A stretch of 64,000 nt of DNA from contig NC_134032.1 in assembly GCF_964204645.1 (NCBI RefSeq), positions 6,684,275-6,748,274 of the forward strand, given 5' to 3'. This DNA comes from Tubulanus polymorphus (Eukaryota > Animalia > Nemertea). The translations under genes were made by a program, and so were the position numbers. The notes beneath the pieces are model-generated. The model made no database searches, was not told the origin of the DNA, and saw only the letters and a list, made by a program, of their open reading frames with translations. Numbering within the stretch: the first letter of the stretch is position 1; each line of letters opens with the position of its first letter. Positions 17,080 to 51,010 of the stretch are shown piece by piece.

Positions 17080-17185
17080 ATGGAGACCAATCTTCTTGGT
17101 TTGTTTATATTGGCCACGTTGCGGATAGCGCCCGACCGTGGTTCGGTCGTGGCTCTGTTACCGAATATCAATCTCAAAGATGAAG
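17080..17185 (+). CDS. Exon 1, signal peptide-like
   Basis: METNLLGLFILATLRIAPDRGSVVALLPNINLKDE|gtaggg, ends phase 1. Confidence 0.6.
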
Positions 17186-50100: not shown

Positions 50101-51010
50101 CAGAAAGATATTTCATATTATATCTAAGCAAGTTTATAAGAATTCCGGAATTTTTAACTTATTGCGTAGAGGGTCAGAGTGGGCTGTATAGTTTGATTTG
50201 GTTATGATTCTAAAAAACTTTCTTCGGGACGAGTAGGTATTTGTTGACGAGACTCTTGAGTTTGGCAGACAGGCTTTGTCAGGTGTCATACTCAGATTGA
50301 TAACAATCAATGGCCAAAACTGGTGTAATAATCAATAACTTAGTGTCTTGATATCTACGTCTTAATAGATTCTTATTCATAGTTGTTATATTAACACATG
50401 TAAATGGTCCTCTGAGTATGTTCTCTGATCCACCCCGCACAAACCATACGATATTTCTGTAGATTTAACCCAAGGCCACTTGGCATTTGCTGGTATGTTT
50501 GTTTCTCGCGTTAAATTGATGTACGTCACAATCTTTGAGCGCCGGAGACCAAACAAATGTGAAAACTGCATTGTTGGAGCAGTAAGAATGTGTAATTTAG
50601 ATTATCCGAGGCAGTCGACTCCAGGGTAAAAGGGTCGAAGTCTGTCTCGATCGAGAGTCGGGTCCGCTATACTATGTTACTATTGAACCCCATTGTATAC
50701 AGTGAATGTACTATTTATATGCGAAAAATTGCTTTCAGATGGCGATCATTTCCGCAAACTGACCGATGACGCTGACCCAGCAGTGGCACGAGAGAAACCG
50801 ATCAGCAGTATTTTCGCACGGTCGCGTATAGAGTGCGCTATGGTCTGCCGATCACTAAGTCATTGCATTAGTTTTCAGTTCGCAGTGTCATTGAATAAGG
50901 ACACAAAACAGCAATGCGTCCTGATGCAACAGTCCTCAAACGGTACATCATCATCGGGTGGCGCCATCTATACAAGGGGTACGCAGAATCTAAGCAATGT
51001 TATAAAATAG
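17080..51010 (+). CDS. Spliced gene: secreted protein with tandem PLAT/LH2-like domains and a C-terminal PAN/apple domain (3' half possibly disrupted)
   Basis: Phase-compatible GT-AG exons 17080-17185, 17885-18032, 20293-20392, 23000-23147, 27966-28131, 28758-28857, 30735-30873, 31047-31197, 32581-32686, 39107-39296, 40985-41144 give one open frame; terminal exon 50739-51010, whose linkage is inferred. Confidence 0.75.
17885..18032 (+). CDS. PLAT-like module 1, exon A
   Basis: YGYLVNLTTTIDRTNKPVYITIYGDSDDRCAETLL; phase 1 to 2; ag/gtaat. Confidence 0.78.
20293..20392 (+). CDS. PLAT-like module 1, exon B
   Basis: FMPMPTRCDHVLNNITKIKLRLETNGSDFRFER; ttttgcag/gtaagt; phase 2 to 0. Confidence 0.78.
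21127..22224. repeat. (GT)n microsatellite, about 549 perfect units
   Basis: 1098 bp of uninterrupted GT. Confidence 0.99.
23000..23147 (+). CDS. PLAT-like module 1, exon C
   Basis: IEITGPVRLLDHDKSLTASFDCKHTDAGGCLVVEGPDG...; phase 0 to 1. Confidence 0.75.
26770..27150. repeat. 42-bp minisatellite arranged as inverted arms (foldback element)
   Basis: About 5 units of gattgtcgaccgattctactcgtcgacaatgtctacaa, then about 2 inverted units; same family at 55080-55370. Confidence 0.85.
27966..28131 (+). CDS. PLAT-like module 2, exon A
   Basis: KVRYAVRLKTLTSRLFRSDSDGRILLALLGTDFRVECEG; phase 1 to 2; gtaagc donor. Confidence 0.75.
28758..28857 (+). CDS. PLAT-like module 2, exon B
   Basis: AFQMRTLLCDQPVSTINGISVFEDGDDLWIFES; 100 bp like module 1 exon B; phase 2 to 0. 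Confidence 0.78.
29008..29336. mobile_element. MITE with about 16-bp TIRs and internal palindromic tttggcccgggccaaa repeats
   Basis: aagccgcgatcacacg...cgtgtgatcgtggctt. Confidence 0.75.
30735..30873 (+). CDS. PLAT-like module 2, exon C
   Basis: IGVAGQTSVGHQDIKFTCPYSMSPCAIDDTLG; aligns with module 1 exon C; phase 0 to 1. Confidence 0.75.
31047..31197 (+). CDS. PLAT-like module 3, exon A
   Basis: YMYNVSIKTADYYGADVGTRVYGRLQDGFVTCPEVAL, a close match to the PLAT N-terminal consensus; ttttag/gtaagt. Confidence 0.82.
31400..31578 (+). mobile_element. tRNA-related repeat family B fused to a family A 3' half
   Basis: Homologous to 49110-49250 (minus): tgcgcatg..gcgca...tctagtgtg.caggg...ggttcgaa.ccctgcc. 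Confidence 0.55.
32398..32534. mobile_element. PIF/Harbinger-like MITE carrying gactggtcttaa repeats
   Basis: TIR ggcc.gttgca...tgcaaccggcc; related repeats at 17282-17800 and 19520-19690. Confidence 0.6.
32581..32686 (+). CDS. PLAT-like module 3, exon B
   Basis: TITRQIPCPGFLDARRTILRVRKPANIKDSWRITK; phase 2 to 0. Confidence 0.75.
34283..35171 (+). mobile_element. Non-autonomous Helentron-associated (HINE/DINE-like) element
   Basis: 5' atgcccc/ggggcat inverted pair, cgtccgtcc microsatellite, tandem cores of about 130-150 bp with ggtcaaaggtcaaggtc, 3' gggggc subTIR plus short hairpin, T-rich site. Confidence 0.75.
35840..37440 (+). mobile_element. Penelope-like retroelement (degenerate RT and GIY-YIG)
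   Basis: DKGNSIVILD, PGKLYGLCKVHK...RPVVS, MGSPLGPTLANF, YIGKIKRHLAIRIKEH, PSLN; deletions and frameshifts; hammerhead motif at the 3' end. Confidence 0.92.
37363..37418 (+). ncRNA. Minimal type I hammerhead ribozyme motif (core variant)
   Basis: Stem I ttgacac/gtgtcaa, CTGATGA, stem II gggat/atcct, GAGA in place of GAAA, palindromic aacgtt. Confidence 0.6.
38385..38825. repeat. Minisatellite, about 66-bp unit
   Basis: aaggtaccacgttgacgatgtccacgctgtctacactaa... about 7 copies. Confidence 0.9.
39107..39296 (+). CDS. PLAT-like exon C plus linker
   Basis: AYVAGSFKGVSASLQTVVNYWIADD...; cgcag/gtaaga; phase 0 to 1. Confidence 0.68.
39906..40698. mobile_element. Non-autonomous DNA transposon (TIR caggggcggat) with internal aagggcac repeats
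   Basis: caggggcggat...atccgcccctg; no clear TSD. Confidence 0.7.
40985..41144 (+). CDS. PLAT-like module 4, exon A
   Basis: IGYIVVLDISEVLGPSMPSSAVNLMLKAIGNKRSCTEKSI; phase 1 to 2; gtaagt donor. Confidence 0.7.
42920..44421. mobile_element. Non-autonomous Polinton/Maverick-like element
   Basis: 6-bp TSD GACGTG (42914-42919, 44422-44427), about 340-bp TIRs beginning AGTAATAGGGGTAATAGG and ending CT; no coding capacity. Confidence 0.8.
44779..47838 (-). mobile_element. LINE (CR1/L2 group), 5'-truncated ORF2 (APE and RT), disrupted
   Basis: APE CLTETHL, GDFNAH; RT QAGFR, GLRQGENLSP, YADD, YLG; frameshift near 46890, stop at 45544; AATAAA plus (TGAAT)n tail; candidate TSD agtct. Confidence 0.93.
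49110..49250 (-). mobile_element. tRNA-related repeat family B
   Basis: B box GGTTCGAATCCC on the minus strand; homologous to 31400-31530. Confidence 0.55.
49649..49742 (+). mobile_element. tRNA-derived repeat, family A
   Basis: gcagcc...ggctgc stem, TAGCTCAG, GATTCGAGTCC. Confidence 0.6.
50739..51010 (+). CDS. Terminal exon encoding a PAN/apple domain
   Basis: RSRIECAMVCRSLSHCISFQF...CVL (C-x3-C-x5-C...C); tttcag acceptor, phase 1; stop followed by AATAAA at about 51022. Confidence 0.82.

What the first reader, a model, noticed from the sequence alone, without database searches (positions are those of the whole stretch)
17080..51010. Hidden multi-exon gene: secreted tandem PLAT/LH2-like protein ending in a PAN/apple domain
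Seen: eleven short GT-AG exons join in one open frame. They give a signal-peptide-like N-terminus and then modules matching the PLAT consensus (Y-x-V-x-x-x-T...V-Y-I-x-L-x-G; I-x-x-I-x-L...W/F; I-x-V...F-x-C). A PAN/apple terminal exon with stop and AATAAA lies on the same strand. Known: multi-PLAT proteins such as LOXHD1 are cytosolic; PLAT binds membranes/lipids, and PAN mediates protein or glycan binding. Inference: a secreted (PLAT)n-PAN architecture is one I do not recognise, and could be a lineage-specific membrane-targeting or recognition protein (immune, mucus or toxin-like). The ORF track shows only isolated pieces of some exons.
Basis: partly seen in the sequence, partly recalled or inferred. 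Interest (0 to 1): 0.8.

Follow-up and report, generated by a model that had tools for sequence, protein, structure and literature searches.

The report
Ribbon-worm repeat protein gene ending in PAN
The window holds a probably real ribbon-worm-specific gene for a likely secreted protein with four diverged three-exon repeats and a confirmed PAN/apple domain; RefSeq annotates only its last four exons, and the suggested PLAT identity of the repeats could not be tested.

Summary
The window is Tubulanus polymorphus (Nemertea), assembly GCA_964204645.2, record OZ123233.1. It is not human.

An 11-exon GT-AG chain of 509 codons can be rebuilt from 17080 to 51010. A 14-exon chain of 661 codons fits better. 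It has a leader exon, four repeats and a PAN exon. Each repeat is made of three exons with the same phases (A 1->2, B 2->0, C 0->1) and is bounded by phase-1 introns.

The PAN exon is solid: Pfam PAN_1 scores 26.1 bits against a cut-off of 21.4, it matches the factor XI apple domains, and it has a stop codon and AATAAA.

RefSeq XP_074656856.1 (LOC141910053, 203 aa) uses exactly the last four exons. It starts at an internal ATG inside the fourth A-type exon, so it looks cut short at the 5' end.

The eight unannotated upstream exons look like coding sequence:
- GC is 0.10 above the flanks (P 4e-4).
- G at codon position 1 is 31% against 21% (P 0.0014).
- GC3 is 54% against 41% (P 6e-4).

The PLAT identity is not shown. 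No Pfam or PDB hit was found for any exon or for the RefSeq protein, and similarity between repeats is weak. The searches made found no relatives elsewhere.

Verdict: a real and partly annotated gene with an unverified fold; moderate interest.

The parts
17080..17185 (+). Exon 1: start codon and hydrophobic, signal-like leader; ends in phase 1
   Evidence: ATG in a good context (A at -3, G at +4), h-region LLGLFILATL, donor AAG|GTAGGG scoring 5.4. It is the best of all ATG-started phase-1 exons in 8800-17885. No canonical cleavage site was seen. SignalP is not available here.
17885..18032 (+). A1: first exon of repeat 1 (phase 1 in, 2 out)
   Evidence: Motifs Y.V.L.T, VYITIYG and C.E..L; GT-AG intron ends; GC 0.10 above flanks.
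24824..24902 (+). B1: second exon of repeat 1 (phase 2 in, 0 out)
   Evidence: Ends in ..FDW|GTAAGT, donor 4.7. The 6.8 kb intron before it holds the (GT)549 microsatellite.
25438..25567 (+). C1: third exon of repeat 1 (phase 0 in, 1 out)
   Evidence: One of only 4 candidates with the right phases. It starts I.L..P.S.G in register with C2 and C4.
27966..28131 (+). A2: first exon of repeat 2
   Evidence: Motifs Y.V.L.T and C.E; donor ACA|GTAAGC; GC 0.18 above flanks.
28758..28857 (+). B2: second exon of repeat 2
   Evidence: Motif I..I.V..DGDD.W; phases 2 in, 0 out. In a phmmer search, B1 ranks 23rd of about 2500 stretches.
30735..30873 (+). C2: third exon of repeat 2
   Evidence: Best splice-scoring exon of its interval (acceptor 4.0, donor 2.1). 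Motif F.C.Y....C as in C1. C1 ranks 11th in a phmmer search.
31047..31197 (+). A3: first exon of repeat 3
   Evidence: Motifs YNVSIKT and C.E; donor ATC|GTAAGT. No gene call covers it in the fetched RefSeq locus L001.
32581..32686 (+). B3: second exon of repeat 3 (tentative)
   Evidence: Right phases; GC 0.14 above flanks; CP...LD..R motif shared with B4. B4 is its top hit (rank 1 of about 2450, E 1.6). Splice scores are weak at -0.4 and -0.4.
39107..39296 (+). C3x: exon in the third position of repeat 3 (tentative)
   Evidence: Strongest splice sites of the region (acceptor 5.4, donor 6.1). Right phases (0 in, 1 out). Coding-like codon make-up (G at position 1 32%, RNY 43%). It shows no detectable similarity to C1, C2 or C4.
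40985..41144 (+). A4: first exon of repeat 4; the RefSeq CDS starts inside it at ATG 41044
   Evidence: The frame is open upstream to 40963. The acceptor at 40985 gives the A-type phases. The GY.V.L motif lies upstream of the RefSeq ATG, which has a poor context (T at -3, C at +4). Motif C.E is present. The A4/B4 junction codon CAG (Q) matches P0001.
48956..49070 (+). B4: second exon of repeat 4; in the RefSeq model
   Evidence: It matches XP_074656856.1 residues 35-72. Residue 35 (Q) is the A4/B4 split codon and residues 36-72 come from 48957-49070, compared by eye. tblastn listed no separate high-identity piece for this exon.
49485..49608 (+). C4: third exon of repeat 4; in the RefSeq model
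   Evidence: It encodes P0001 residues 73-113, identical to the window translation. The tblastn piece covers residues 71-113 at 95% because it runs 2 residues past the exon start. Acceptor 6.0. It starts ITITGPGSNG, in register with C1's IELTTPSSDG.
50739..51010 (+). Terminal exon: PAN/apple domain and stop codon
   Evidence: Pfam PAN_1 at 26.1 bits against a cut-off of 21.4. Factor XI apple domains E 2.6e-4. 100% identical to P0001 residues 115-203. Junction codon TAT (Y) matches.
51022..51027 (+). AATAAA polyadenylation signal
   Evidence: It begins 12 nt after the stop codon.

Best explanation
One Tubulanus polymorphus gene spans 17080-51010 on the + strand. It has 14 exons and encodes about 661 aa.

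Anatomy: a leader exon gives a signal-like N-terminus. Four strongly diverged repeats of 119-149 aa follow. Each repeat is split into three exons with the same phases (A 1->2, B 2->0, C 0->1), and every repeat is bounded by phase-1 introns, the usual layout of shuffled extracellular modules. The last exon encodes a PAN/apple domain. RefSeq LOC141910053 (203 aa) is a 5'-truncated model of this gene; it starts at an internal Met in the fourth A-type exon. Long introns have taken up a microsatellite, a reverse-transcriptase-bearing repeat, a LINE and an inverted-repeat element.

How it likely works (inferred, not shown): it is a secreted or surface protein. The PAN domain binds protein or glycan. 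The four cysteine-bearing repeats are beta-rich binding modules. They may be PLAT-like and so bind lipid or membrane, which would make the protein an extracellular bridging or recognition factor.

Shown: the exon chain, the PAN domain, the overlap with RefSeq, and the coding-like make-up of the upstream exons. Inferred: that all 14 exons are spliced into one mRNA, that the protein is secreted, the fold of the repeats, and the function.
For: - The frame and phase arithmetic is clean and all 13 introns are GT..AG.
- The last four exons coincide with XP_074656856.1, including both split codons.
- The RefSeq start lies 59 nt inside an exon. That exon's frame is open upstream, its upstream part carries the A-type GY.V.L motif, and its acceptor at 40985 gives the same phases and size as A1-A3.
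- A PAN domain protein without a leader is odd. No phase-1 start exon exists between 39297 and 40984, whereas exon 1 at 17080 is the best such exon in the 9 kb upstream of A1.
- The eight unannotated exons are GC islands (0.104 above flanks, P 4e-4). Their codon-position bias resembles the transposon ORFs used as positive controls (G at position 1 31%, P 0.0014; GC3 P 6e-4). Their amino-acid make-up is protein-like (P 4e-4).
- Exons of the same type find each other near the top of about 2500 window stretches: B3->B4 rank 1, A3->A1 rank 10, C2->C1 rank 11, B2->B1 rank 23.
- A C.E motif is present in all four A exons, and C[PD] is present in B2, B3 and B4.
- None of the 11 exons tested (the first eleven-exon chain minus B4, plus C3x) is a repeat within the window; B3, A4 and B4 were not tested.
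Against: - RefSeq does not join the upstream exons, and no gene call overlaps A3 in the fetched locus.
- No longer protein and no fragment of 55-177 aa carrying the PAN exon turned up in the two searches. No other sequence shares P0001's 90% cluster.
- Similarity between repeats is weak. No pair reaches E below 1 in the unbiased window search, and shuffle P values are 0.01-0.08 at best. Several exons were first picked by motif, which biases those P values.
- C3x resembles no other C exon, and B3 has weak splice sites.
- The leader lacks a canonical cleavage site.
- There is no PLAT hit anywhere.
- The AlphaFold model of the RefSeq protein is uninformative (pLDDT 38).
Confidence: 0.55

Rival explanations
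1. The RefSeq model is essentially right: a short gene of about 203 aa starts near 41 kb. The upstream exon-like pieces are silent relics of older repeat copies, a gene decapitated by transposon insertions, and are no longer spliced to it.
For: Only this model is on record, and no gene call covers 31044-41043. The introns that would link the parts are long and full of transposons. No longer product is found in the searched collections.
Against: The annotated start is an internal Met with poor context inside an exon that is open upstream. The product would hold a PAN domain and most of one repeat but no leader. All ten upstream exons keep their frames, their GT-AG ends and a coding-like codon bias, which decayed relics tend to lose.
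Confidence: 0.25
2. The gene model is right, but the repeats are not PLAT/LH2. They are another beta-sandwich (for example immunoglobulin-like) or a fold not yet described.
For: No PLAT hit for any exon or for the RefSeq protein, which holds B4 and C4 joined and most of A4. PDB searches return no lipoxygenase, lipase or polycystin. The only weak hits of the C-exon profile are TREM2 V-type Ig domains (E 0.75-1). Each repeat carries 2-4 cysteines, which is unusual for cytosolic PLAT domains.
Against: The order and spacing of motifs over all three exons (Y.V.V.T ... VYI.L.G ... C.E..L; I..I.L ... DW; I.L.TP..G ... F.C) and the repeat size of 119-149 aa fit the PLAT layout as I recall it from lipoxygenase. 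That is recollection, not a test. The TREM2 hits are not significant.
Confidence: 0.4
3. There are two neighbouring genes: an upstream one (leader plus repeats 1-3) and the annotated downstream one (repeat 4 plus PAN), derived from one another by duplication.
For: RefSeq calls only the downstream part. Tandem duplication is common for such modules.
Against: C3x ends in phase 1 with no stop. No terminal exon for an upstream gene was found, and no start exon with a leader for a downstream one. A4 needs an upstream phase-1 partner.
Confidence: 0.1
4. The upstream exons are a chance pattern picked out of 34 kb by eye.
For: Motif-guided picking inflates the apparent similarity. The pairwise scores are weak.
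Against: The composition and codon-position tests do not depend on the motifs and give P of about 1e-3 to 4e-4. All donors are above the 95th percentile. The same three-exon phase pattern recurs four times, once inside an independent RefSeq model.
Confidence: 0.05

Closest known systems
RefSeq XP_074656856.1, uncharacterized protein LOC141910053 (Tubulanus polymorphus)
   Same: It is the same locus. It shares the last three exons exactly and the 3' 101 nt of the fourth-last exon.
   Different: It starts at an internal ATG (41044) and has 203 aa. It lacks the leader, repeats 1-3 and the first 19 codons of repeat 4.
PAN/apple domain proteins (Pfam PF00024; factor XI and prekallikrein apple domains, HGF and plasminogen N domains)
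   Same: The terminal exon passes the Pfam cut-off and aligns to all four apple domains of factor XI. It has the four core cysteines.
   Different: There is a single PAN at the C-terminus, preceded by unrelated repeats and with no protease domain. The nearest PAN relatives are only 30-43% identical multi-PAN proteins.
Tandem PLAT/LH2 proteins (LOXHD1) and PLAT domains of lipoxygenases, lipases and polycystin-1 (PF01477)
   Same: The unit size is similar (119-149 aa against about 115). The same order of short motifs runs over the unit, and the units are in tandem. The motif comparison rests on my recollection and is not a tool result.
   Different: There is no HMM or sequence hit. The repeats bear cysteines, follow a leader and are joined to PAN. 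LOXHD1 is cytosolic and has 15 PLAT domains.
Single-PLAT-domain proteins of plants and spider mites
   Same: They show that PLAT also occurs as stand-alone single-domain proteins in lineage-restricted, expanded families. The mite families show no sequence similarity to proteins outside their lineage, and only some members reach the Pfam model (PMC6288829).
   Different: They have one domain per protein and no PAN. No similarity to the present repeats was tested. That plant PLAT1 carries a signal peptide is from my own knowledge, not from that paper.

Membership tests
PAN/apple (PF00024) | Match to the family HMM above the curated cut-off | tested here: met
   26.1 bits against 21.4, E 7.5e-6 on 50687-51007. 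24.5 bits on P0001.
PAN/apple (PF00024) | Similarity to solved apple domains and the core cysteine pattern | tested here: met
   Factor XI heavy chain E 2.6e-4, aligning to each of its four apple domains over the ..EC..VC....C..F......C stretch.
PLAT/LH2 (PF01477) | Match to the family HMM | tested here: not met
   No PLAT hit. E up to 10 was allowed for 9 exact exon peptides and P0001. E up to 1 was allowed for 6 stop-free stretches holding model exons. E up to 0.01 was allowed for A4 and B3. B4 was scanned only as part of P0001. Power is low on a third of a domain. The scan of a whole joined repeat was left out by rule.
PLAT/LH2 (PF01477) | Sequence similarity to solved PLAT-bearing proteins (lipoxygenase, lipase, alpha-toxin, polycystin-1) | tested here: not met
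   phmmer or hmmsearch of A1, A3, C1, the A profile and the C profile against the PDB returned none of them at E up to 10.
PLAT/LH2 (PF01477) | Eight-stranded beta-sandwich fold | not testable with these tools
   It needs a model of a whole joined repeat, a step left out by rule. The only database protein with most of a repeat (P0001) folds with pLDDT 38, which is unusable.
Secreted protein | Cleavable N-terminal signal peptide | tested here: inconclusive
   A ten-residue hydrophobic core is at residues 5-14 (maximum Kyte-Doolittle mean 2.58). No clear small-x-small cleavage site is seen, and no SignalP is at hand.
Exon-shuffled extracellular mosaic protein | Modules bounded by phase-1 introns, and a leader exon ending in phase 1 | tested here: met
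   The leader, repeat 1, repeat 2, repeat 3, repeat 4 and PAN are all separated by phase-1 introns.

The most novel reading that the evidence does not exclude
A nemertean-restricted secreted protein in which four true PLAT/LH2 beta-sandwiches, stabilised by disulfides, are fused to a PAN/apple domain. That architecture is not on record as far as I know. It would act outside the cell as a lipid- or membrane-binding and glycan-binding bridge, for instance in epidermal mucus, in defence or in prey capture.
Probability: 0.25. Interest if true: 0.6.

Novelty: new variant of a known kind. Interest (0 to 1): 0.4.

Why it matters
The result corrects a public gene model. LOC141910053 is probably about three times longer than annotated and gains a leader.

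It also adds a taxon-restricted extracellular mosaic protein to a phylum whose secreted proteins are little known. If the repeats prove to be PLAT domains, this would be an example of tandem PLAT used outside the cell and coupled to PAN. If they do not, they are a repeat family with no detectable relatives, which is worth a structure.

Neither outcome bears on a long-standing open question.

Tried and rejected
- Pfam on stop-free stretches and on exact exons: only PAN was found.
- Rfam on the window: nothing.
- PDB searches with A1, A3, C1 and with the A and C profiles: noise only (penicillin acylase, PHD fingers, TREM2).
- Word search with the PAN exon: nothing.
- Word search with residues 1-113 of P0001: only P0001 itself.
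- AlphaFold of P0001: pLDDT 38, so no fold search was run.
- Look-up of the gag ORF, meant to reach the annotation of 8-18 kb: not on record. The first try had a coordinate slip.
- Paper search for the assembly accession: none.
- Candidate B3 at 31340-31425: rejected. It lies in a repeat (31303-31527) that has an inverted copy at 49120-49354, 76% identical.
- Acceptor 50703 for the PAN exon: rejected in favour of 50739.
- Profiles built from A, B or C exons found no further copies in the window. Profiles built from two or three exons did not pick up the other members, which shows how diverged the repeats are.
- Considered but not run: a word search with a stacked alignment of P0001 and the exon peptides, to fish for an upstream annotation. 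The profile would be meaningless, and the likely product lies outside the length range.
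Full report
Origin. The window is eukaryotic. It holds a perfect (GT)549 microsatellite, LTR and non-LTR retroelements, and no Alu. The big protein search with the PAN exon returned P0001 (203 aa, E 3e-51). Its encoding locus L001 (NCBI GCA_964204645.2, record OZ123233.1, 6715318-6745284) is 100% identical to window 31044-61010. P0001 is RefSeq XP_074656856.1, 'uncharacterized protein LOC141910053 [Tubulanus polymorphus]'. 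I therefore take the contig for a nemertean chromosome, not for human.

Rebuilding the exons. Reading the DNA gave exon 1 (ATG 17080, donor AAG|GTAGGG at 17185, phase 1) and A1 (17885-18032), joined through a split GGA codon. Motif and phase scans then gave A2, A3, B1, B2, C1 and C2. The A exons all enter in phase 1 and leave in phase 2. The B exons run 2->0 and the C exons 0->1. The PAN exon enters in phase 1.

tblastn mapped three pieces of P0001 to the window: 41044-41144, 49485-49608 and 50739-51010. Residues 36-72 match the translation of 48957-49070, compared by eye. With 48956-49070 and 49485-49608 added, an 11-exon chain closes at 509 codons.

A better model with four repeats. The first RefSeq coding exon has the phases of an A exon. 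Its frame is open upstream of the annotated ATG, back to 40963. An acceptor at 40985 gives lead 2 and trail 2 and a length of 160 nt, like A1-A3. The stretch upstream of the ATG carries GY.V.L, and the exon carries the C.E motif found in every A exon. Between A3 and this A4 lie two more in-phase exons:
- B3 (32581-32686) is a GC island. It shares CP...LD..R with B4, and B4 is its top hit among about 2450 window stretches.
- C3x (39107-39296) has the strongest splice sites in the region and a coding-like codon make-up, but no likeness to the other C exons.

The 14-exon chain has 1986 nt, which is 661 codons plus a stop. All 13 introns are GT..AG. There are no junction stops, and both junction codons shared with P0001 agree. 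The repeats are 119, 135, 149 and 133 aa long, and each is bounded by phase-1 introns.

Are the unannotated exons real? Three tests do not use the motifs.
- GC: the eight exons from exon 1 to A3 exceed their 200-nt flanks by 0.104 on average. The null from 474 stop-free stretches has mean 0.021 and sd 0.069, giving P 4e-4 for a mean of eight.
- Codon positions: G at position 1 is 31.4% against 21.1% (P 0.0014). GC3 is 53.6% against 41.1% (P 6e-4). Purine at position 1 has P 0.011. The three RefSeq-shared exons and the Ty3/gypsy-like pol ORF lean the same way on G and purine at position 1, while GC3 is also raised in the RefSeq-shared exons and in pol but is low (31%) in the LINE reverse transcriptase ORF. 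For this test the in-frame codons were pooled for counting only.
- Amino-acid make-up: Fisher P 4e-4.
These three tests are correlated with each other. In addition, all donors lie above the 95th percentile of GT sites. Exon 1 is the best ATG-started phase-1 exon in the 9 kb before A1, and no such exon exists between C3x and A4. By contrast, the part of A4 that RefSeq uses as its first coding exon (41044-41144) shows no GC excess, and its ATG has a poor context.

Limits of that evidence. Similarity between repeats is weak. Shuffle P values are 0.009-0.08 for the best pairs, and other pairs show nothing. In an unbiased phmmer search of each exon against 2700 window stretches, no pair reaches E below 1, although partners of the same type rank 1st to 23rd. 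RefSeq does not join the upstream exons, and no gene call overlaps A3 in L001. No longer product and no short fragment with the PAN exon appears in the searched collections, and P0001 is alone in its 90% cluster.

PAN. The assignment is firm. Pfam PAN_1 is above its cut-off. The exon aligns to all four apple domains of factor XI. It has a stop codon and AATAAA.

PLAT. Nothing that could be run supports it. There is no Pfam hit on the exons, on the stop-free stretches or on P0001, which holds B4 and C4 joined and most of A4. No PLAT-bearing structure appears among the PDB hits. AlphaFold of P0001 failed (pLDDT 38), so no fold search was made. These tests have little power on thirds of a domain.

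I left out the joined step: family scan, profile search, signal-peptide call and fold of the joined protein or of a whole joined repeat.

From memory only, the motif order over the A, B and C exons resembles the lipoxygenase PLAT domain (VY[IL].[IL].G...C.E..LL; I.L..I......DW; I.L.TP..G....F.C). This is a lead, not a test. Stand-alone single-domain PLAT proteins are known in plants and spider mites (PMC6288829). A non-significant likeness of the C profile to TREM2 Ig domains keeps another beta-sandwich in play.

Relatives. Among 1.84 billion representatives, the PAN exon finds only P0001 and three generic multi-PAN proteins (E 8e-8 to 4e-4, 30-43% identity). The word search with repeat 4 finds only P0001. 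As far as these searches reach, the gene looks taxon-restricted. The upstream repeats themselves could not be searched at full length.

Verdict. This is a real gene, probably much longer than its RefSeq model. It most likely encodes a secreted protein with four repeats and a PAN domain. The fold of the repeats and the function remain inferences.

Noticed in passing
window 21127-22224: A perfect (GT)549 microsatellite of 1.1 kb lies inside the A1-B1 intron. It produces long false ORFs in all frames.
   Followed up: partly
window 3242-8694, minus strand: A Ty3/gypsy-like LTR retroelement with apparently intact ORFs. The gag ORF has 458 aa (PNMA, zf-CCHC). The pol ORF has 1333 aa (RT, RNase H, integrase). 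The LTRs were not looked for.
   Followed up: partly
window 44779-47875, minus strand: A non-LTR retrotransposon (endonuclease plus reverse transcriptase) in three ORF pieces sits in the A4-B4 intron. A second LINE-like element (zf-CCHC plus endonuclease) lies at 53372-54850 on the + strand.
   Followed up: partly
window 35741-37265 (+) and 51806-53333: ORFs at 35741-37265 carry only a weak reverse-transcriptase fragment (RVT_1 E 0.0079 on 36216-36527). Separately, a GIY-YIG ORF at 52226-52720 (-) overlaps the inner ends of 542-nt inverted repeats (51806-52347 and 52793-53333, 98.7% identical). A Penelope-like element is my guess only.
   Followed up: partly
window 42915-43262 and 44079-44426: A pair of 348-nt inverted repeats, 98% identical and about 0.8 kb apart. 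It looks like a foldback or terminal-inverted-repeat element in the A4-B4 intron.
   Followed up: no
window 31303-31527 (+) and 49120-49354 (-): Two copies of a dispersed repeat in opposite orientation, 76% identical, lie just after A3 and just after B4. An exon-like open stretch inside it (31340-31425) can be mistaken for a B exon.
   Followed up: yes
window 26771-26971 and 55251-55367: The same 42-nt tandem repeat occurs in both orientations, 4.8 and 2.8 copies.
   Followed up: no
window 39107-39296: Exon C3x has the best acceptor and donor of the whole region and a coding-like codon make-up. Yet it resembles none of the other repeat exons, and RefSeq does not use it. This is unexplained.
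   Followed up: partly
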